In this document: piece by piece, positions 1 through 50,686 of the stretch
Numbering within the stretch: the stretch's first letter is position 1
Layout: every line of letters starts with the position of its first letter
NCBI RefSeq assembly: GCF_036588685.1
Contig: NC_086385.1
Coordinates: forward strand, 47,577,216 to 47,641,215
Length of the DNA: 64,000 nucleotides
Reading direction: 5' to 3'
Source of the DNA: Mytilus trossulus
Lineage: Eukaryota
Program-made: the position numbers and the translations under genes
The notes under the pieces: generated by a model
The model's database searches: none
What the model saw: the letters and a program-made list of their open reading frames with translations, nothing else
What the model was told of the DNA's origin: nothing

Positions 1-1665
1 AAGGGGCTTATATAATCAATTCAATTATTTTTTTTACTACTTTGAGCAAATGATGCTCATCAGTACAAATATATATGCAAATACAATATATCATAAATAA
101 ATACATAAAACATACATAACTGATAAATGAATACATCCGAGAAGAATAATAATCTATATTACGTATTGGTAACTTATAACATGCCGGTTCTACGTTTAAA
201 TGCATGGAAAAGAAATTTACAAAGGTTACATATGTCTTTTACATTTTCTGTGCTCAACAACTGCATAAGCTTAATTGACGATGGACGCTTATAATAAGAT
301 GGCTTAATATACTGTCTCCTAATTGCATTATAACAATCACACTGTAAAATGAAATGAAACTCGTCTTCTATTGTATTTAAAGTACATAGAGTGCATTTTC
401 TTTCTGATCTATTAACAACGTGATATCGTCCTCTTTCACCAAATAAGTTATGTGAAGACTCTAAAATTCACGTTTAGTAAGGTAAAATTGTAAACGAACA
501 TTATTTACACAGTATTTATATAAAAAACACTTTGGCGAGCCATCCAGTAATTGATTCAAATATTAATTCTCTTGATCAAATATTCTAGTTTTGACAAAAT
601 ACTAGTGTCATTTACAACTAAACTATTTTGGTTATACCAGAAGTCATTCAGACCCAAATTAAACAATAAATACTTCTGTTGATAAAGCCAACTATTTCTG
701 TTATTACATTTATTCCGTACCTGCTCTTTGTAACAACTTTCAAGAATACAATTATTCGTTGCTAAAAGTTTAAACCAGTATCTTATAACATTATACAATC
801 TATAATATATCAAAGGATATCTACCAAGCCCCATATCTCACTGCCATAGCATAAAATACTACTTATATATGTATCAAACGAATTAAGGTATGTGAAAACA
901 TTCAAATCTAAGGATGACACTTTCGATTTCAAGGCAAATACACAGCTTTCCTGCCTTGCTCAGCTAATTGTTTTTGAGTTTTCAAACATTTTCCGATATA
1001 ATTCAACAGAATACCTAAATAACAAAATTCATCAACAATATCACTAACACTACCATCAAAATACCAATAATTTTCTTCAACTCTCACATTACCACCATTT
1101 CTAAATACCATAAGTTTTGTTTTAGCATTGTTCACAGTTAAACCCCATTTTTGAGTTTACAATAAAAGTGTGTCAAACATATTTTGTAAACCTTTAACAG
1201 AATCAGAAAATAGTATCATATCATCGGCATGCATAAGCAAAAATAGAGACAATTCCTGTACTTCATACGGTACATTACCGTTATTTAAAAATTCCATTTC
1301 AAAATCGTTCACGTACAATGAAAAAAGGATTGGAGAGATTACTTCCCCTTGCATTAAGCCAACTGCACTCGTGAACTGCTCTGAATAAAAACCATCAATT
1401 CGTACACATGATTTCACATTTGAATACATTGATTTTAGTATTAATAAAAGTTTCCCTGTTATACCAATTTTTGACAATTTCAACCATAAATTCAGTCTAC
1501 ATATTGTATCAAACGCCTGTTTGTAGTCTACAAAACAGCAATACAAACGATTTTTACTAAAGAGTGGTTTTTGAATGACAGTTAATAAACTAAACATCGC
1601 ATCAACTGTACTGCTGCCCGTCCGAAATCCACACTGTGCATCAGTTATAATGTCATAGGTGTCGG
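1..1665 (-). mobile_element. Degenerate non-LTR retrotransposon (RTE-X-like LINE), RT and C-terminal zinc-knuckle region
   Basis: Collinear minus-strand ORF fragments 1157-1597 (FVDYKQAFD, GLMQGEVISPILFSLYVND, HADD in place of YADD), 929-1135 and 556-834. The C-terminal GRY..ERKC..C..IEDEFHFILQC motif lies at about 330-450. Broken by stops and frameshifts. Confidence 0.85.
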
Positions 1666-17427: not shown

Positions 17428-17482
17428 GTTGTCAAAAGAATTAATAGAATTATTATTTCATTATACCTTGAACTGATCTAAT

Positions 17483-17591
17483 ATGAAGCAATCTGTTTGT
17501 GTTTTATTCTACTTGATTCTGCTTTCTTTATTATTTGTGCAGTGCCAAACCAGACTTATTGATGTGTTATTTGAAATCAACGACAATAGAG
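17483..17591 (+). CDS. Secreted prepropeptide A1, exon 1 (signal peptide + acidic propeptide)
   Basis: MKQSVCVLFYLILLSLLFVQC-QTRLIDVLFEINDNR followed by a phase-1 donor G|GTAATG. Paralogous to 35671-35779. Confidence 0.85.
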
Positions 17592-19683
17592 GTAATGTTA
17601 TTTAACGAAAATGAATTATATGATGTGTAATCTTAAATTCTATATAAAAAAATGCAATGATTTAATTTGAATTTTAAAGAAAATGTTGTGATAATAATCA
17701 TTGTATGTAAGTAATATAGCATATGTGGTGAATTTAGTGAAAAGTTTACAAAAGTTTCAATTTCAAATTATTTTCAATATACATCTCACTCTGAGGCAGT
17801 TTGTTTTTCTCAGTGTTAATTTCATATGACGTTTTACGTCGGCTATTTCTTTTTTTTTTTATTACTTTCGTACATTGCATCAACGTTGTAAGTTTCAAGT
17901 TCACTTATACGGTGTGAGTGCCATCTTGATTTTTTTTTTTTTTTGCACTCTTAATATCTACTGCTGTCTTTTAAGAACGGTACTTATCCTTTGTGGTTAT
18001 ATTGCTCTTCAACTGTTTCGAATTTCATACATCCTTGGCTATGTGCATGGCAGTGTAACATATGGGTTAAGTAAAATTTTATAGAAATTAGGAAAGATGT
18101 GGTATGATTACCCATGAGACACCTATTTACTGGTGTTATAAACGAAGTAGAAGAAATCAATCATTGCCTTCAACAATGAGAAAAACCAATACGGTATAGT
18201 TGTCTGTAAAAAAATCCGAAAGTTTGCGACACCATTCGAATGAGCAAATTAACGCCAAATTAATAACCAAACAATTAACGAAAAATAAGAATGACAGATA
18301 TGCATCAACGATAACCACTGTACAGTCTTCTGACTTGGGACAGGCAAATACAGAATATTGCGGGGTATACATGTTGCTGAGGGCTTATAATAAAAACAGT
18401 TGTGTAACTGCACAACATATATAATAAATTGTGAAAAGAAGTTGCATAGATAAAATTGTTCTTTTCCAAAATCAAAAGTTTTATTACAGAGAAATATACA
18501 AATAAAAAATATTATAGTACATTTCGACAAGTAAATCACAGAATAACAACGAACACCTTAAATTAATTTACGACAGTACATAAGACATTAAAAAGAATTG
18601 TGAACTGTGCGTCTCACGAATGAAATAAACGCCACAAAAAGAGACGTCACAAGTTAGTTCTAAAAAATATATATATAATATCGGGATTAAGTTTTTAATT
18701 GTGTTATCAAATGTATTTTCCAACAATTACAAGAATAATATATAGAATTTGTTAGCAATTGTATAAATATTGTATTTACTAACAAAGTATGTGTTTTTCT
18801 AAATCAAACTGTGTAAAAACAAACAAAGCAAGTGCATAAACTTCTTTAAATCAAAGATCATAAAATGAACTAGGTTATTGAAAAATAGACACGTGCAATG
18901 GATAAAGCTATAAACCCTTCAGTTGTGAACAAGTGTCAGCCACTGAAACATTACACCACACGATAAGCATGGTAATCGGATACAAGTGTATACCACTGTA
19001 AACTGTCCTTAAGTACAGACAACAAAAGAATAGAACTAGTTAATTATTTGAATACAGTTTATATATGTAGCAATACGTCTATTGATTAGAATAGCACAGC
19101 ATTGATTTGCAATTATTTATATCAATTGTGTTGCTTGGATTAATACCTTGTAACTGTTACGTGTAGTAAGCCGTTTAATTTCTGTGTCATTTTGCTCTTG
19201 TGGAGAGTTGTCTCATTGGCAATCATACCACTTCATCTTTTTTTTATATTTGATATATACAGATCTCAGAACCATGGTTCATGACAATATTAAGCCTTAC
19301 AAAAAAGGAAAATCCATGACAAACGCTTTGCTTGATTTCGAATGAGCAGTTAAACATTTAAAATAAGGCAGAAACCAAGGCCCCAACAACCTCATTCAGA
19401 GTTGGCCTTTAAAGGATTCAGCTGTTCGATGTCCTTTTTGGTTATAGCTTCTCAATGTTTTCGGCCCGTATACATCCTTGGCTTACAAATTTTCGGATTT
19501 TATCGTTTTCTATGAAGGTAAAGTCTTATGCATGGAATTTAAAACGTGTTTTTTTTAAATTTTATTTTTAGTTATTTTTATCAATTTTACAGAGAAAGGA
19601 TCAATTCTTGTTTTTATTTGGATCCTCAATACTCATTATTATCATTTTATCATTATTATCATTATCCTAATTTTCATTTATAG

Positions 19684-19808
19684 ATGATACAAGTTATCCT
19701 TCCATCAACAAGAGAAATACTGGTTTTAGATGTCCAACTGGCTTATCTCCCAGAGAATGTTATAATCAGTTAATGACAGTATGGATCAGGCGTCTGATTA
19801 AAACATGA
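19684..19808 (+). CDS. Secreted prepropeptide A1, exon 2 (KR site + 30-aa mature peptide); precursor 77 aa
   Basis: Acceptor ttttcatttatag, phase matches exon 1. Reads (D)DTSYPSINKR-NTGFRCPTGLSPRECYNQLMTVWIRRLIKT*. AATAAA at 19924-19929. Confidence 0.85.
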
Positions 19809-22066
19809 ACTGATATATAGTTTTCTACAAACGTTAAAATATTCTGTCTACTGTTACAGTATATTTGCACCGTGAATTTCACATCTATGCATTCATTACA
19901 GTATTGTTATTTATATGCTATTTAATAAAACCATTACAATTAAGTTATTATTCTTTAAGTTATTCAGTATGATAAGCTTGTATAATGGTTTACATTTTTA
20001 AATTGTTATTTGGATGGAGAGTTGTCTCGTTGGCAATCACACCACATCTTCCTATATCTATTGTATGATCATGTCAGTATAAGATTTTATAAGTGTATTC
20101 AGTTTGTCGAATAAAACTGTCGTGGTATATTATATTGAAGACTAAATTATAAAGGAGTCTTATATGTGAAAAACACAATCAAATGAAACAGAAAATTGAT
20201 ATTTGTTTCACTATATTCAGAATTTGCATATGATTTTTAATCAACAATTTGATCTAATATAACATAGGATAGAATAGAGAAAGTAGCAACGAGATAAAAA
20301 CCCTACCAAAGAGAAAAAACAGTCTATGGCCACTAATGGGTCTTTAATCCAATGAGAAAATATCGCATCCGCAGGCGGACTTCAGTTGCCCCATAAATAA
20401 AATCGTATATCAATATACGTTATGCAAATTTCTTATATTATCCATTCATTACATACTTTGGACACGCGGCATTTGTTAATCTGCACTAATTTTTCATAAG
20501 CTCGCTCCTCCCACCCATAGCAATGGGTGATGATAATAGCAACAGATGTAAATGCCTCCAATTAACACCTGTCTGAGCCCAAGGTTTGCCAATCCGGAAA
20601 TTTAACATTCACTAAGGCCAATGTTTCCAATCATTTCAGTCGTATTGTTGTTGTTATTGAAAAAAACTTAGACAACACAAATATGACAGTGGAACGTATA
20701 TCAGAATATATATTAGAAAGCATAACAAAGAAACTAGGGATGTGACGTTACATACGAAACACTAGAGTTTGACGTTACGTTAAGCGCAATTAAAGTCATT
20801 AAATTCATGATTAGTAAACTATCTTAGCACTATTACTTTTACAATTGTGCTTCTAATAATACAGCGCCCACTTAAATCATACGGTTTTCCGTTTAATAAA
20901 GAAGATACTGCCCTTGGATAACGGTGTTAGAGTGATAATATGTTCCCTCGTATGTGTATCTTCCCTAACAAAGTCAGTATATTTATACTAGTTCAGCGAA
21001 AAAGACGCCGCCGTAAACTCCAAAAAATACAACTTGAATAATTACTTCACCATTCAAACAAATGCTAGAGATTCCTGACTTAGGACAGGCGTAAATATGC
21101 AGCTAGACTAAAATCGTTTCGAGGGATCAAAACTATTCCATTATACCTCTTGCCAACAAGGAGTTAACAAACACACAGCAATACACATAGTAAAACGGAG
21201 CTCGTTTTCAAAACTATTCGAATTGAGTTTGGATATAGCATTATGGTCATCCCGAACTCTTTTTTTTATCATTTTGGCATTATAATGCTTTCAAAAGTGA
21301 GGAGTTGATTTGCATTTGCTGATGTATAGATCCACAATGAGAATATGTATATGTCCAAACGTCATAGAATGAGATTTGTCTTTATCTTTTCGCAGTGATC
21401 TTGTAGGTACATTTTATCACCAATGAGACCTTTCACTACTTATTTCATATTAAACTACAATTTTCAACACATATTTAGTTTGGTAATTGTTTGGTCTGAT
21501 TTAAAGCAACTTTGAGCCAATTGTAATATTTTGTTGTGGGGCATTTTTTTTTCTCATGATAAACCAATAAAAACTTTTTTGTTGAACAACTTTCTATATT
21601 ATTCAACCAAAGTAAATTGAATTAATATTTTATATAATCACACGGAGGTAACACCAAATTAACTAAAGACAAAACCAGGACAAAATACAAAGACTATTAT
21701 ACATTTCTCTGTCTTTAAGCATATTATATACAAAATTCGAACTATAATTGACTTCAAAATATTTTTTTGAAGAAATGTGTTTGTGTATGAAATATTTATC
21801 AAACATATAGATGACGAATACAATTGATCTAGTAAACTGTCGGGACAACCTGAATATAAAAATGTTTACTTTTGTTGTATTCCTTCACTTTTTATACAGG
21901 AATCAGCTCGCATGGACCAGTGACGTAGCAGCATCACTTGTTAACCTTTTTAAGTGGATGATTTATAGATCAGCACGTGTTCACACCTGATACAGGTGAT
22001 ATAAATGTATATAAGTTTTTTTCATTAATAACTCGTGTGTAATGTGAATACTTCATTAACAGTCCT

Positions 22067-35670: not shown

Positions 35671-35779
35671 ATGAAGCAATCTGTTTGTGTAATATTCTAC
35701 TTGATTGTGCTTTCTTTAACATATGTACATTGCCAAAGTAGATTTTTTGATGTTTTAGTTGAAATAGACGATACTAAAG
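35671..35779 (+). CDS. Secreted prepropeptide A2, exon 1
   Basis: MKQSVCVIFYLIVLSLTYVHC-QSRFFDVLVEIDDTK followed by a phase-1 donor G|GTAAGG. Same length as A1 exon 1; similarity to A1 fades just after the donor. Confidence 0.88.
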
Positions 35780-36792
35780 GTAAGGTTATTTCTATGAACA
35801 CTATGTTTCTCTTTACTTTAAACAACAGAGCCACCATTGGTAAAGGTGTAAAGAAGAACATTTAAGAAATTGTATCGTCACATATTTAGTGTGAACATTT
35901 TCTTATCTATCTTATAAATACAAATTTGTAAATATGTTTATGTTATTACTTCAGCAAGGAATCTTTTTGAAAGAAAAACAAATTGAGTTTAACTATTATA
36001 GAACATTATGAAGAACGTCAAGTGAGTAAAATATATGTTGACAAAACGCATCTGTCTATTAAGTTGATCTGCAAAAAGTTTTCACTAAAATTGACGTCTT
36101 CGGACATGGTTACCCTTTAAACATAGTTAATCAAATTAATAAATAGACGAAAAGATGGCGTATAGACTGAAAATACTAACACAAATTTGAATAAATTCAA
36201 AATTATAATATCAAAATTGGAGAGTGAGCTTGCTTATTTAAACAACTTGCAAACACCTCTAAAATATATATTTCTTGCATTCAACATGTTAAGACTCAAC
36301 AGAGAAATTGTCAGCATGAAGAGCATAGTTTCTGATGTATTAAATGATACAATTACATGTGTTCATTGTTCATAAAGATTTTGATCATACTTTTTTTTAA
36401 CAAATTATCGAATCAAGAACGGAAAATCAGATCGAGCGTAATATATTTATCTTTACTTTTTTACTATTATTTTAAATGTTATATTTTAAGCTAGGATATT
36501 GACTTGATCACTATAATCATGCATAATAATTTCAATTGAATTATTGTGTAATTATCCTACAGAGTATATCGGAGTAACGTATTTATTTTCACAATATTCA
36601 AAACTGGATTGGCATATTCTAAAAATACAAACTGGGATACCGACATAAATTAGGCCGTTAGTTTTCTCGTTTGCATTGTTTTACATTGACATTTCGGAGC
36701 CTTTTATATCTGATTAGGTTGAAATATTTTTGAAATGCAAGCTAAGAAATCGACTTAATTACTATAACCATGTATATCAATTTCAATTATAG

Positions 36793-36917
36793 GTGATACA
36801 AGTTATATTTCCATTGACAAGAGAAATGCTGGTTTTAGATGTCCAGTAGGATTATCTCCCAGAGAATGTTATAATCAATTAATGACAGTATGGATCAGGC
36901 GTCTGATAAAAACGTGA
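36793..36917 (+). CDS. Secreted prepropeptide A2, exon 2; precursor 77 aa
   Basis: Acceptor tttcaattatag. Reads (G)DTSYISIDKR-NAGFRCPVGLSPRECYNQLMTVWIRRLIKT*. ATTAAA at 37031. 3'UTR conserved with A1. Confidence 0.88.
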
Positions 36918-40400: not shown

Positions 40401-40618
40401 ATGAAGGTTCTTTTATGTGCTCTCTTCTTTATTTTGTGCCATGGGCTTCAAGCGAAACATGAAGGTTTCCTCATTTAATGGTAAAGAAAGGATGGGGATT
40501 TCAAGCATCAATACCTTGTCTTTATCATGGAAAATTGTACTTTATTCCCGTCAAATTTACACGTTTCTGCTTCAGACATCCTAACTGTGAATGTAATGTG
40601 AACAGACTCGGTATATGA
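40401..40618 (+). pseudogene. Secreted peptide family B, copy B1 (4-Cys type), 1-nt frameshift
   Basis: As written: MKVLLCALFFILCHGLQAKHEGFLI*. Restoring one base in the T run at 40466-40468 gives a 72-aa precursor ending ...PHLMVKK-GWGFQASIPCLYHGKLYFIPVKFTRFCFRHPNCECNVNRLGI*, collinear with B2. Confidence 0.8.
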
Positions 40619-43185
40619 ATTCTTCTATTAAGTAAGAATTAGGTTAGCATATAATGAACATCAACAGGACAAAAATAAATGACATTTGATTCGAAGGATC
40701 CATGTTATGAACATAATTCTGTGAGAATTTGCCTCTATGTGAACATTAATTGAATAAAACAATAACGGTTTCTACCTCACTGTAGTGGCAGTGTTTTCTT
40801 GGTTTTGTTTTAGCGGAAATGAGGTTGTCTGTGTATCGTTCTACTAGACGGAGGCAGCTGTTTTAACATAAATACGTTCCCGTCGATGTTTTTGTTTTTT
40901 TACAAAATATGATAAGTCAATTTACAGACTTCCGTTGAAACAATTTATTTTGCTACAGTATGTTATTGCATCTTTACTTTTTTGTTCTATCTGTTAAATA
41001 TTGTTTTCTTAATTCAATATTTTTCTGATGTAGTATTTTGTTTATTTTATTTTCAAAATAAAATTATTTATAAGTTAAATGGCAGTTAGATTTAAACCTT
41101 TGTATATATCCGTTTTTAAATTAAAATTTTGTAACAATAATTAAACAGTACAGTTTTGAATCTAAACTGTGTAATAATAATTAAACAGTACAATATGTGA
41201 AAGCTCTGACTTATAGAAACATACAGCATGTCATATACAGCATGTACTACCTAATATTTGTTTACTTACGATAAAAGCATTGAATGTTTGGTTTCAGATG
41301 ACATTGGTCACACACAAGGATAGCCATTAATGTTTGTATATGTGTGTATCTCACCTTAACCCATATATGATGAAGGGTTTCTCGAAATATTCATACCCAT
41401 GCAGTTAAAACATGAAAAATGGTCAAAAATGGTGGACCTTACTTTTGTTCAGCACTGCTAATTATATTCAATATGCAAACCTCAAAATTGTATTGAGTTT
41501 AGAAATAGATGCATCTATAATGGTTTACTTTTTCAAATTGTTTTTTGGTTGGAGAGTTGTGTCATTGTCACTTACACCACATTTTCCTATATCTATCTAA
41601 ACTTAATTTGCCATAACAAAGAGGCGAAATAGACCAGAAGGACATTCAAACTCATAAGTAGAAAAAAAAATGTCAAAAAAGACAAACAGGCAAATAATAA
41701 TACACAAAACAATACATTTACAGAAAACTAAATGCTAAACAACAACCCCACCATAAACTTGGTGTGATCTCAGGTCTTCTGGAATAGTTATTATAATATT
41801 ACCAATTTCGGAAATTGTGCGATTCTTAAAATATGACACACAAAAAGGACTGACGAGGTTTGTGACTTAAACTTAAACTTAGGTATTGTAATTATAATAT
41901 ATTTTCCCTCTTTTTTCGAGGTCGATCAATCGTATGAATATACTTCAATATCTTTTTTTTACGTAAGATTTTTTTTAAAGACCTTGTGAAGAGGTTAAAC
42001 ACTTAGTCTAAGATCAGATTGCAGTCAACAACATTTTAATTTATTTTTATATTATTTGGACAGTTTGTGGCACACTTCAGACGTCAAACTGGTGTGTATG
42101 GTATGGAAGACATATTACCCCAATTATATCAGATGCATTTGCTAAAAGGACACTTTGTTCTAATAATGAAAGTGTCTGCTATTATTTTCATACCGATGTC
42201 CGAACAATTTGACAAAATAGTTAAAGCACATAATACGGTAAAAAATATATTGCCCAGAAATACAAAATACACACAAAAATGTAAATTCAGTCGTATCAAG
42301 AAAAAGAACAGCTAGAAAAATACGAATTTATTTTTTAAGCTGTTCTTATTTCTTCATATGACTGATTTTTGTTTTTGTTTTTTTGTTTGTTAATAAATTC
42401 AATTTGAAAATCATTTTTCTATGAGTAGAACAAATAATCAACAAAATCGACACCCATGCAAAACAACAACAATAAACAGTCAAACATTACTTTTGGACAC
42501 ATATTGCTAAAAAAAACTGCGTCTCAAAACTCTTGGTCGATAAATCTACTTAATGGTTGACTGCTTATAAGAGTTGTAAAAAATGACTTTTAAAACATAT
42601 GAAATATCAAAAGAGTTGTCTTCCTAAATCTTTGATTACTACTTTCGGAGGGAAATTCTGATCTAGATAATTAAATAACTTGTTTAGTTTTATCTGTTAA
42701 ACTTATGAGGACAGAATTTCCTTTCGGGTTATGCAAAATCGAACAATCCAAAGGTAAAATTACCAAAAAATTGAACACCGAGGAAATTCAAAAAGGAAAG
42801 TCCATAATCAAATGGCAGTATCAAAAGCTGTAATATTCCTGACTTGGTACAGTTAGCTAACGAGTTTTAAAAAAGCTATCTGTTAACCAGTTCAAGCAGA
42901 GTATTTATTTCAGTTTGTATCTACAATAAACTGTCTAACCGGAAATTCTAACATACGACCTAAATATAGATTTTTTTAAAATAAATTATCTTTATTCCGT
43001 TCAAAGTCAAAATAATTTTAAACTTTGCCCACTAAATTAAAATTACAAAGTGAAAGATAACAAATAAAGAGTTGAGAACAAAGATGATATTTTTTTCGGT
43101 GTTGTAACGACACTTTAAAGCACCGCATCTAAATTTAGCCCTAGTATCTATGATGAGTTTATTTAGACTATTTCACGGCAATCAG

Positions 43186-49312: not shown

Positions 49313-50686
49313 GTAACCACGTTTGGTATAGTATTTTTTTTCTTAATTCTATTTTCAAAGTAAAAGTATCAATAAGATAAATGCACGTGTTTTGTTCTTT
49401 AAATGAAAAATACATAACTTCTAGTGTAAGTCTTTTGTTTAGGAGTATGTTATCAAACTTGCAATTCCATGAAATTAAACTGAGCAATTTAAGTAAAAAT
49501 TTGATGAAACATAATGACCAGTACAAGTATAACATGCTCTGTCTTAACTAAATTTGCAATTTTTACATTGTCAATATGAAGTTACAAACACAGCCTCAAT
49601 TTCCTAGAATATCAAAAATTCATCAGTACATTCATAAAGGCACGAAGGAAGCAAATGGAGGACAAAATATACCAAGAGAACAATCAAAAACCATTAGTCG
49701 AATAGTATCATGGTAAAAAAGCACAAACAATAGTCTATAAAACAATATCTAAAAACTAAGCAAAGCGAACACTGACAAATCGGAGTTGATAATAAATGCT
49801 CCTGAAAGTAATAAGGCACTAACTGTGTTGATAATGCGAAGCAAACAAATATTTGCAGTCGCATTAAGTGACATATATGTGCCTGTTCCAAATCATGAAC
49901 CTTTATAAGTTAAGTGGTTGTTTATTTGTTACATATTAGTTGTTCAATCCTTTTTTTATATCAATAAGATGGTTAGTTTTCTCGTTTGAATTGTTTTATA
50001 TTGTCATTTCGGGGCCTTTTATAGCTGACGATACTATATGGGCTTTGCTCATTGTTGACAGCCGTACGGTGATCTAGTATCGTTTTTAATGTCTGTGTCA
50101 TTGTGGTCTCTTGTGGAGAGTTGTCTCATACCATGTTTGCATGTCTACGACAAAGGGAACGTATCCTTGGTCTTTATTGGTATAAATATTTCATGATTGA
50201 CATCAAAATCATGACGACGTCCGTGATACATTCTTAGTGATAACTTTTATCATTAGGACCCCTTGTTTAGATACATTTCCCTTAAGTAAGGGACAGTCAA
50301 CTGGCAGAGATATCGACTAGTTGGTGTAAAGATCATGATTATTTCTGCGAACATAATACGTGTTTTTTTAGAACTCTACTCACAAATTACGGAAATTAAA
50401 AAATATCATAGCATATATGTTAATTAAAATCATATAGTGTTTCGTCATATTCTATCTTCAATTTTAAACGAAGGAAATAGAACCTCACAAACAGTTATAC
50501 ATACCAAAAATCTGAAAAACAATCACAGTTTGTTTGAATGAGAGATGCAATCAAAAACAGACAGGAGTACAATGTTACAAATTTATTCCTTAATCAAGTT
50601 GGTTCTAAAAATATTTGGTTGCAGACAAAGATACATATAAGTTAAAATCATTGATTTGTTAAGTTATTGTTGCCTTTCTAACAAAC

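What the first reader, a model, noticed from the sequence alone, without database searches (positions are those of the whole stretch)
17483..19808. Family A: 2-exon precursor of a 30-aa single-disulfide peptide conserved like a hormone
A1 is missed by the ORF track because it is split by a phase-1 intron (2092 bp; 1013 bp in A2). A1 vs A2 differ at 5/21 signal residues and 10/26 propeptide residues but only 2/30 mature residues, with four synonymous changes in the mature part (ggc/gga, cag/caa, att/ata, aca/acg). The introns are largely unalignable. This points to purifying selection on the mature peptide: a C-x8-C loop (CPxGLSPREC) followed by a probable amphipathic cationic helix YNQLMTVWIRRLIKT, net about +4. 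That pattern is more typical of a receptor ligand (neuropeptide, hormone or pheromone) than of a hypervariable AMP (inference). The internal RR could be a second cleavage site.
Basis: partly seen in the sequence, partly recalled or inferred. Interest (0 to 1): 0.82.

Follow-up and report, generated by a model that had tools for sequence, protein, structure and literature searches.

The report
New mussel secreted loop-helix peptide family
The flagged stretch is a real, transcribed and spliced two-exon mussel gene for a small secreted precursor whose final 30 residues (a disulfide loop plus a helix) are strongly conserved. It is one of nine such genes in an undescribed family, and what the peptide does is still unknown.

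Summary
A1 (17483-17591 + 19684-19808, phase-1 GT..AG intron of 2092 bp) and A2 (35671-35779 + 36793-36917, intron 1013 bp) each encode a signal peptide, a propeptide ending in KR, and a 30-aa C-x8-C peptide.

Contigs from three RNA-like public runs join 17591 to 19684 with no mismatch, so A1 is spliced as predicted. An A2-like spliced transcript is present too.

The genome holds nine family members on four chromosomes. All nine have a phase-1 acceptor. The six members whose first exon was found all have a coding part of exactly 109 nt.

The A1/A2 comparison alone is only suggestive (p=0.07). Copies on different chromosomes settle it: in the 21-codon core, synonymous sites are saturated (pS 0.81-0.87) while pN is 0.08-0.14, and the propeptide is almost unrecognisable.

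The family motif is C-P-x7-C-Y-x2-L-M-x2-W-[IM]-R. There is no Pfam, PDB or literature match. The only named relatives are "uncharacterized" Mytilus proteins. One unlabelled relative carries three modules between KR sites.

The second R of RR is not conserved, so RR is unlikely to be a cleavage site. The helix is predicted but is not significantly amphipathic.

A specific signalling ligand is the best reading, but it is an inference. An antimicrobial role is not excluded.

The parts
17467..17482 (+). A1 5'UTR, shortest extent seen. RNA-like contigs start at 17467, 17470 and 17478, with no upstream ATG and no sign of a further 5' exon.
   Evidence: table 8 (records 9, 10, 25)
17483..17545 (+). 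A1 signal peptide (21 codons, MKQSVCVLFYLILLSLLFVQC). Cleavage after V-Q-C is inferred from the -3/-1 rule.
   Evidence: the [VM][QH]C motif is kept in all six known first exons
17546..17591 (+). A1 propeptide, exon-1 part, plus the first base of the split codon. Exon 1 ends at 17591.
   Evidence: coding exon 1 is exactly 109 nt in six paralogues
17592..19683 (+). A1 intron, 2092 bp, phase 1, GT..AG. It holds transcribed repeats at about 18046-18393 and 19175-19244.
   Evidence: table 5 (joint 17589>19682, cut +2, GT..AG, in X1 and X4; 17592>19685 in X2)
19684..19715 (+). A1 propeptide, exon-2 part, ending in the K-R convertase site (..SINKR).
19716..19805 (+). A1 predicted mature 30-mer NTGFRCPTGLSPRECYNQLMTVWIRRLIKT (Cys6-Cys15 loop, then helix). 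The stop codon is 19806-19808.
19731..19793 (+). Conserved family core, 21 codons: C-P-x-G-L-S-x3-C-Y-x2-L-M-x-V-W-I-R-R.
19809..19950 (+). A1 3'UTR, with the AATAAA poly(A) signal at 19924-19929. An RNA-like contig runs to 19914.
   Evidence: (record 8)
35671..35779 (+). A2 exon 1 coding part (signal plus propeptide, 109 nt).
35780..36792 (+). A2 intron, 1013 bp, phase 1, GT..AG.
36793..36917 (+). A2 exon 2 coding part (..SIDKR|NAGFRCPVGLSPRECYNQLMTVWIRRLIKT*).
   Evidence: An A2-like spliced contig is in run X2 (record 11 and table 5c).

Best explanation
A1 and its neighbour A2 are functional two-exon genes of an undescribed nine-member mussel family of secreted prepropeptides.

Shown:
- The A1 gene is transcribed and spliced at 17591|19684.
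- Exon 1 encodes a classical hydrophobic signal sequence and the start of an acidic propeptide.
- Exon 2 encodes the end of the propeptide with a KR site, and a C-terminal module whose sequence has been held nearly constant while the synonymous sites and the propeptide have diverged to saturation.

Inferred:
- After signal-peptide removal, a furin/PC-type convertase cuts after KR in the secretory pathway.
- This releases a roughly 30-residue peptide in which Cys6 and Cys15 close a 10-residue loop (invariant Pro after Cys1), and a helix runs from inside the loop to the C-terminus (CY..LM.VWIR.L).
- Almost every helix position and the loop anchors are fixed. The precursor regions evolve freely, which is the reverse of known mussel antimicrobial families. 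The peptide therefore most likely acts by specific binding to a protein partner, as an extracellular signalling ligand (neuropeptide, hormone, cytokine-like or pheromone), rather than by generic membrane attack.

The gene, secretion and selection part is about 0.9 likely. The 'specific ligand' part is about 0.45.
For: Splicing: contigs of X1 and X4 skip exactly 2092 bases with GT..AG ends, and the cut shifted by 2 gives 17591|19684. They carry 0 mismatches over 123 and 233 exon bases. X2 shows the same joint, plus two paralogue or allele transcripts joined at the same place. No joined copy exists in the genome: all exon-1 and exon-2 matches lie 1-2 kb apart. AATAAA lies at 19924.

Family: nine loci, on C13 x3, C5 x3, C2 x2 and C11 x1. 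All nine have a phase-1 acceptor. Six have a 109-nt coding exon 1.

Selection: core dN/dS is 0.15-0.40 within C13 against 0.5-1.2 for signal plus propeptide. Between C13 and C5 copies, core pS is 0.81-0.87 against pN 0.08-0.14, and 9-10 of the 17 codons with the same amino acid differ synonymously. Amino-acid change is 4/21 in the core against 14/15 in the propeptide, p=2e-5. C, P, C, Y, L, W and R are invariant in 16 sequences.

Structure: AlphaFold2 gives a helix over residues 22-39 at pLDDT about 77.

Relatives: a profile search of 1.84 billion representatives found nine true relatives. One is M. galloprovincialis XP_076092933.1, 'uncharacterized', 96% identical to the C2 copy. Another is an unlabelled 164-aa protein with three modules, each behind KR or KRR. 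This is a copy-number pattern common in neuropeptide precursors.

Against: - No tissue, receptor, peptidomic or activity evidence exists. The runs are coded and are only guessed to be RNA.
- The family is multi-copy, tandemly duplicated and apparently restricted to mussels. It lies in a region with another small Cys-peptide family (Family B, about 40.4 kb). That pattern is typical of mussel defence effectors and unusual for classical neuropeptides.
- The peptide is cationic (+4) and rich in hydrophobic residues, and it has no amidation signal.
- KR is absent at the homologous site in the three C5 copies (MR or ML; they carry KRK in exon 1), so the 30-mer boundary does not hold across the family.
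- The A1/A2 contrast alone is not significant (p=0.07).
- The language-model resemblance of the three-module relative to neuropeptide precursors scores only 0.75-0.80, which is within noise.
Confidence: 0.5

Rival explanations
1. Host-defence effector. After KR cleavage the cationic 30-mer is released from haemocytes or mucosal epithelia. Its hydrophobic Trp-containing helix inserts into microbial membranes, or it binds a specific microbial target, and the disulfide loop stabilises it.
For: - Net charge is +4, with a hydrophobic helix containing W, I, L and M.
- The family is tandemly duplicated on four chromosomes and found so far only in Mytilus and unlabelled sequences.
- It neighbours another small secreted Cys-peptide family in the same window.
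- The last exon carries the dibasic site, the mature peptide and the 3'UTR, as in MgCRP-I genes. Phase-1 introns are shared with MgCRP-I and myticalins.
Against: - The selection pattern is the reverse of described mussel AMP families: here the mature part is conserved and the pre-pro part is free.
- Amphipathicity is not above shuffles (p=0.13).
- Contig depth is low, 4-11, in all runs that hold it. Depth is a poor measure of expression.
- Distant members are less cationic.
Confidence: 0.3
2. The functional product is not the 30-mer. Either the whole roughly 56-residue pro-protein stays intact as a small secreted protein, or processing happens elsewhere: at the exon-1 KRK in C5 copies, or by trimming at the basic tail.
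For: - C5 copies lack KR at the homologous position and have KRK 25 residues upstream.
- Other members have KK or RR, and basic clusters lie after the helix (RKQQKR, NRKRRI).
- No peptidomic evidence was available.
Against: - K and R at the site are the most conserved propeptide positions (12/16 K and 13/16 R).
- Sequence upstream of the site is unconstrained (13% identity between the C13 and C5 groups).
- The N-terminal part of the exon-2 peptide has low confidence in the fold.
Confidence: 0.12
3. The transcripts are noise, or the genes are decaying duplicates without function.
For: - Contig depth is low.
- A1 and A2 are absent from public protein sets.
Against: - Reading frames, splice sites and the core motif are intact in nine copies despite saturated synonymous divergence.
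- Several paralogues are spliced correctly in RNA-like runs.
Confidence: 0.03

Closest known systems
MgCRP-I cysteine-rich peptides of Mytilus (PMC4558851)
   Same: - Mussel multigene family of short secreted prepropeptides.
- Signal peptide, short pro-region ending in KR, then a C-terminal Cys-containing mature peptide.
- The last exon carries the dibasic site, the mature peptide and the 3'UTR.
- A phase-1 intron is present.
   Different: [quoted passage not shown]
- Here there are two Cys, two exons and the opposite selection pattern.
- No sequence similarity was found.
Myticalins, linear cationic gill AMPs of Mytilus (PMC5577615)
   Same: - Mytilid-restricted multigene family.
- Dibasic convertase site and a phase-1 intron.
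- Cationic product and modest expression.
   Different: - Myticalins have no Cys and are Pro/Arg/Tyr-rich.
- Their order is signal, mature peptide, dibasic site, then an anionic C-terminal extension.
- They have three exons with a non-coding first exon, and high inter-individual variability.
- Here the mature part is C-terminal, disulfide-looped and conserved.
Elevenin and GGNG/GGNamide neuropeptides of molluscs (scallop sequences in PMC5996578)
   Same: - A single intramolecular C-x8-C loop in a peptide released from a precursor at basic sites.
   Different: - Those peptides end 5 residues after the second Cys (..CLGVAA, ..CLGGNamide).
- They have no Pro after Cys1, no CY..LM..WIR helix, and the genes are single-copy.
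- Apart from the two Cys, no conserved residue is shared.
- Motif strings of this family are absent from the scallop and oyster neuropeptidome supplements.
Calcitonin/CGRP/amylin-type hormones (from general knowledge, not tested beyond Pfam)
   Same: - The overall design is the same: an N-terminal disulfide loop directly followed by a helix that carries receptor-binding residues.
   Different: - The calcitonin loop is C-x5-C (C-x4-C in adrenomedullin), its C-terminus is amidated, and the peptide is longer.
- No Pfam hit was found, and no amidation Gly is present here.

Membership tests
Convertase-processed secreted prepropeptide (general kind) | N-terminal cleavable signal peptide | tested here: inconclusive
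   By inspection only: n-region MK, a 15-residue hydrophobic h-region and V-Q-C at -3/-1, kept in six paralogues. No signal-peptide predictor was available.
Convertase-processed secreted prepropeptide (general kind) | Dibasic cleavage site between the pro-region and the conserved peptide | tested here: met
   The site is KR in A1-A3 and the two C2 copies and KK in the C11 copy, with K in 12/16 and R in 13/16 sequences across the alignment. It is not met at this position in the three C5 copies.
Convertase-processed secreted prepropeptide (general kind) | Gene is transcribed and spliced to give the open reading frame | tested here: met
   The joint 17591|19684 appears in contigs of X1, X4 and X2.
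Convertase-processed secreted prepropeptide (general kind) | Mature peptide detectable in tissue or secretion | not testable with these tools
   This needs LC-MS/MS.
MgCRP-I | C-C-CC-C-C array; conserved pre-pro region and hypervariable mature region; four exons | tested here: not met
   The genes here have two Cys and two exons, with the mature part conserved and the pre-pro part variable (compared).
Myticalins | Cys-free P/R/Y-rich mature peptide before the dibasic site, followed by an anionic C-terminal extension | tested here: not met
   The mature part follows the KR site, contains a disulfide pair, and has no anionic extension (compared).
Elevenin | C-x8-C loop with a short conserved tail (..C-[LR]-G-V-[AS]-A) and aromatic/Pro-rich loop content | tested here: not met
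   The loop length matches. The loop sequence (P-x-G-L-S-x-x-E) and the 15-residue helical tail do not match scallop elevenin in PMC5996578.
Calcitonin/CGRP (Pfam Calc_CGRP_IAPP) | C-x5-C loop, C-terminal amide, profile match | tested here: not met
   There was no Pfam hit at E<=10. The loop is x8, and no Gly precedes the stop codon.
ATPTG10-like (PF20716) | Profile match above the gathering score | tested here: not met
   Only the three-module relative scores, at 17.5 bits against a cut-off of 25. The PDB chain 6tmg_p matches at E 0.25 and lacks the second Cys and the Tyr. This is a chance resemblance.

The most novel reading that the evidence does not exclude
The C-P-x7-C-Y-x2-L-M-x2-W-[IM]-R loop-helix module defines a previously unrecognised peptide-hormone or neuropeptide family. 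Precursors carry one module in mussels and three modules in at least one other, unidentified organism, and the peptide acts through a still-orphan receptor. A1 and A2 would then be unannotated ligand genes that escaped annotation because the open reading frame is split by one intron.
Probability: 0.3. Interest if true: 0.72.

Novelty: new variant of a known kind. Interest (0 to 1): 0.5.

Why it matters
Small split-ORF peptide genes are routinely missed by annotation. A1 and A2 are absent from a 5.8-billion-protein collection, although they are expressed.

The family reverses the evolutionary signature of known mussel peptide families: here the mature peptide is frozen and the precursor regions are free. 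That marks it as a candidate for a specific ligand-receptor system in bivalves, whose endocrine and pheromone signalling is poorly known and matters for aquaculture.

The 30-mer is short enough to synthesise, so the rival functions can be tested directly.

Tried and rejected
- **Pfam:** nothing at E<=10 on the exon peptides or on relatives, apart from a sub-threshold ATPTG10-like hit.
- **PDB sequence profile search:** only ATPTG10 at E 0.25 and lipoxygenase noise. Rejected, because the second Cys and the Tyr are missing.
- **Foldseek against the PDB with the AlphaFold2 model:** nothing.
- **ESM Atlas:** no usable hit for the A1 peptide. For the three-module relative, the neighbours are neuropeptide precursors at 0.75-0.80, which is only a weak lead.
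- **Word-index protein searches:** none for the A2 exon-2 frame and none for the three-module protein beyond itself.
- **Long hits of the profile search:** P0003, P0005, P0006, P0009, P0010 and P0015 are repeats without the motif. Rejected.
- **JGI metagenome contig scans:** two scans, both empty.
- **Full-text motif searches:** 0 papers. The oyster and scallop neuropeptidome supplements gave 0 hits.
- **One-sided conservation on the helix:** tested as a sign of a binding face and not found (conservation moment p=0.52).
- **Earlier findings of this scan:** searches by word and by sequence found nothing on the paralogues.
- the spliced 77-residue precursor was never sent to any search or fold tool as one sequence. 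All searches were done exon by exon, by reference. Only codon counts were pooled across the two exons, inside scripts.

Full report
**1. The observation**

- A1 starts with ATG at 17483. Its 109 coding bases end at 17591, before GTAATG.
- The intron ends in TTTATAG at 19683, and exon 2 runs from 19684 to the TGA at 19806-19808.
- A2 has the same layout at 35671-35779 and 36793-36917.
- The introns are 2092 and 1013 bp and both are phase 1.
- Each predicted product has a 21-residue signal sequence, a 26-residue acidic propeptide ending in KR, and a 30-residue C-terminal peptide: NTGFRCPTGLSPRECYNQLMTVWIRRLIKT in A1, with T2A and T8V in A2.

blastn aligns only the 5' flank plus exon 1 (75%) and exon 2 plus the 3'UTR (86%). 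The introns do not align.

**2. Is it a real gene?**

One search of public runs returned four small assemblies that the tool guesses to be RNA. They hold 5-12% of the words of the 2.6-kb stretch, about the share the exons make up. When laid on the stretch, their coverage falls on the two exons and on intronic repeats.

- One contig each in X1 (organism A) and X4 (organism B) skips exactly 2092 bases with GT..AG ends. Shifted by the 2 ambiguous bases, the cut is 17591|19684. These contigs have 0 mismatches over 233 and 123 exon bases.
- X2 has the same joint, plus two further contigs joined at the same acceptor whose exon 1 differs from A1.
- One of those two shares three of its five listed differences from A1 with A2, so it is an A2-like allele or orthologue.
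- Contigs begin at 17467-17478 and reach 19914. AATAAA lies at 19924-19929.
- X1 also holds an unspliced contig across the acceptor.

A processed DNA copy is an unlikely source of the joint. In the whole assembly, exon-1 and exon-2 matches always lie 1-2 kb apart.

Caveats: the runs are contigs, their RNA status is a guess, and depth (4-11) says little about expression level. The tool allowed only one laying call, so the A2 junction was not tested directly.

**3. The family**

Searching the window's own genome with the exon-2 peptide, and then with a profile, gave the same nine loci.

- Three lie on this chromosome: A1, A2 and A3, the last about 29 kb beyond the window end on the opposite strand.
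- Three lie in tandem on contig C5, two on C2 and one on C11.
- All nine have a phase-1 acceptor with a good polypyrimidine tract before the peptide exon.
- For six of them, exon 1 was found upstream. Its coding part is always exactly 109 nt, ending G|GTAAG or G|GTAAT.
- In the seven closest copies the invariant residues are C16, P17, G19, S21, C25, Y26, L29, M30, V32, W33, I34, R35 and R36.
- Across 16 sequences including outside relatives, C, P, C, Y, L, W and R remain invariant.

The genome is a Mytilus. The C2 copy is 96% identical to M. galloprovincialis XP_076092933.1 and 80% to an M. coruscus protein.

**4. Selection**

A1 versus A2 alone is weak evidence. Core dN/dS is 0.15 against 0.52 for signal plus propeptide, but on very few sites (p=0.07). 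The 3'UTR is almost as similar as the mature coding part (83.5% against 91%), so gene conversion is a live alternative.

The case is made by older duplicates.

- **Against A3:** the signal-plus-propeptide region has dN/dS of about 1.2 and the core 0.16-0.40 (p=0.008).
- **Between the C13 and C5 groups:** the 21-codon core keeps 17 amino acids, although 9-10 of those codons differ synonymously. Core pS is 0.81-0.87, which is saturated, and pN is 0.08-0.14.
- **The exon-1 propeptide:** it is 13% identical between the groups. Amino-acid change is 4/21 in the core against 14/15 in the propeptide (p=2e-5).

The post-KR core is therefore under strong purifying selection.

**5. Anatomy of the peptide**

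AlphaFold2, run with the 16-sequence alignment, gives a helix over residues 22-39 of the exon-2 peptide at pLDDT about 77. The helix runs from inside the loop, through the second Cys, almost to the end. The propeptide part is disordered.

The hydrophobic moment of the helix is 0.46, not above shuffles (p=0.13). Conservation is not confined to one helical face (p=0.52). Most of the helix is fixed.

The second R of 'RR' is Y, F, M, V or H in other members. It is followed by conserved [LM][LIM], so RR is unlikely to be a general processing site. After the helix the tails vary in length and are often basic.

The C5 copies have MR or ML instead of KR and carry KRK in exon 1. Their product, if cut, would be longer.

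**6. Relatives elsewhere**

Pfam, the PDB sequences, Foldseek and the ESM Atlas gave nothing usable. The word-index search found no protein like A2 of 27-85 residues in 5.8 billion sequences, so A1 and A2 are not in public protein sets.

The profile search of 1.84 billion representatives gave 15 hits, of which nine are genuine.

- Some are ORF fragments from unlabelled Logan, ENA or JGI contigs.
- One is the M. galloprovincialis 'uncharacterized protein LOC143064173'.
- One is a 164-residue ENA protein with three modules, each preceded by KR or KRR: LCPKNVDPQDCFQQYMSVWL.., FCPAWMPRVQCFDQYLSLWL.. and ICPPGMRKEECFHSMMSTWI... hhalign gives it 96% probability.

Motif strings occur in no paper of the library, nor in the supplements of two bivalve neuropeptidome papers.

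**7. What it most likely does**

Shown: a transcribed, spliced gene; a secretory-type N-terminus; a dibasic site; and a constrained C-terminal loop-helix module.

Inferred: convertase cleavage after KR, a Cys6-Cys15 disulfide, and extracellular action.

The mussel peptide families described so far behave in the opposite way. [quoted passage not shown] Myticalins are variable Cys-free peptides (PMC5577615). Near-total fixation of the mature sequence, together with a relative that repeats the module between dibasic sites, points to specific recognition of a protein partner, which means a signalling ligand.

Several features point the other way: the lineage-restricted tandem expansions, the cationic and hydrophobic character, the lack of an amidation signal, and the neighbouring Family B peptide genes. 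All of these would suit a defence effector. I put the ligand reading at about 0.45, the defence effector at about 0.3, and other processing or function at the rest.

**8. Comparison with known kinds**

Scallop elevenin (RPKIGRRFCAHYPFAPRCLGVAA) and GGNamide also have C-x8-C loops, but with 5-residue tails and no shared residues (PMC5996578). Calcitonin-type hormones share the design of a loop followed by a helix, but not the loop size, the amidation or any profile match.

The family is therefore a new peptide family of a familiar general kind, the convertase-processed secreted prepropeptide. It is not a member of any described family that I could test.

**9. Verdict**

- The hormone-like function is plausible but untested.
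- The amphipathic-helix and RR-cleavage details are weakened.
- Interest is moderate. The finding is a concrete, synthesisable candidate ligand family that annotation missed, but no functional data exist yet.

The spliced precursor was never submitted as a joined sequence. All searches were done exon by exon, by reference.

Noticed in passing
window 19175-19244 (inside the A1 intron); also 20015-20051 and 50085-50129: A short motif of about 45 nt recurs three times in the window. It has very high summed depth (16,000-72,000) in all four RNA-like runs, with many different flanks. It is a highly abundant transcribed interspersed repeat.
   Followed up: partly
window 18046-18393: A second intronic stretch of A1 is covered at depths of about 17-1,600 by contigs of all four runs. 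It is probably another transcribed repeat and has no second copy in the window.
   Followed up: partly
window 1160-1597 (-): An ORF fragment carries a reverse-transcriptase domain (RVT_1, E 2.4e-13). It is a retroelement remnant.
   Followed up: partly
window 40401-40690: A second small secreted Cys-peptide gene family (Family B in other notes of this scan) lies 3.5 kb downstream of A2. The region is therefore a cluster of small secreted-peptide genes.
   Followed up: no
L004-L006 and L012, L013, L015 (G000:C5:62.645-62.665 Mb): Three tandem paralogues lack KR at the usual site (MR or ML) and carry KRK in exon 1. They have a 16-17-residue extra tail after WIRR (..THKLDNNSWETRIL). This is a subfamily with different processing.
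   Followed up: partly
P0007 (ENA contig of 1072 nt, organism unknown): A 164-aa protein carries three loop-helix modules between KR or KRR sites, and its composition is GC-richer. This is the only sign that the module exists outside mussels and in multi-copy precursors.
   Followed up: partly
P0014, P0016 (M. galloprovincialis LOC143064173); P0021, P0022 (M. coruscus): The pro-region of the C2-type orthologues holds repeated NGVxSAPLxxR units, and the unit is duplicated again in M. coruscus. These could be further small products or simply repeat expansion.
   Followed up: no
exon 1 versus the core, C13 against C5 copies: Synonymous sites of the signal-peptide codons are much less diverged (pS 0.28-0.55) than those of the core (0.81-0.87). 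This hints at nucleotide-level constraint or conversion acting on the signal exon.
   Followed up: no
window 19524-19693: Run X1 holds an unspliced contig across the A1 acceptor, besides the spliced one. It could be pre-mRNA, intron retention or DNA carry-over.
   Followed up: no
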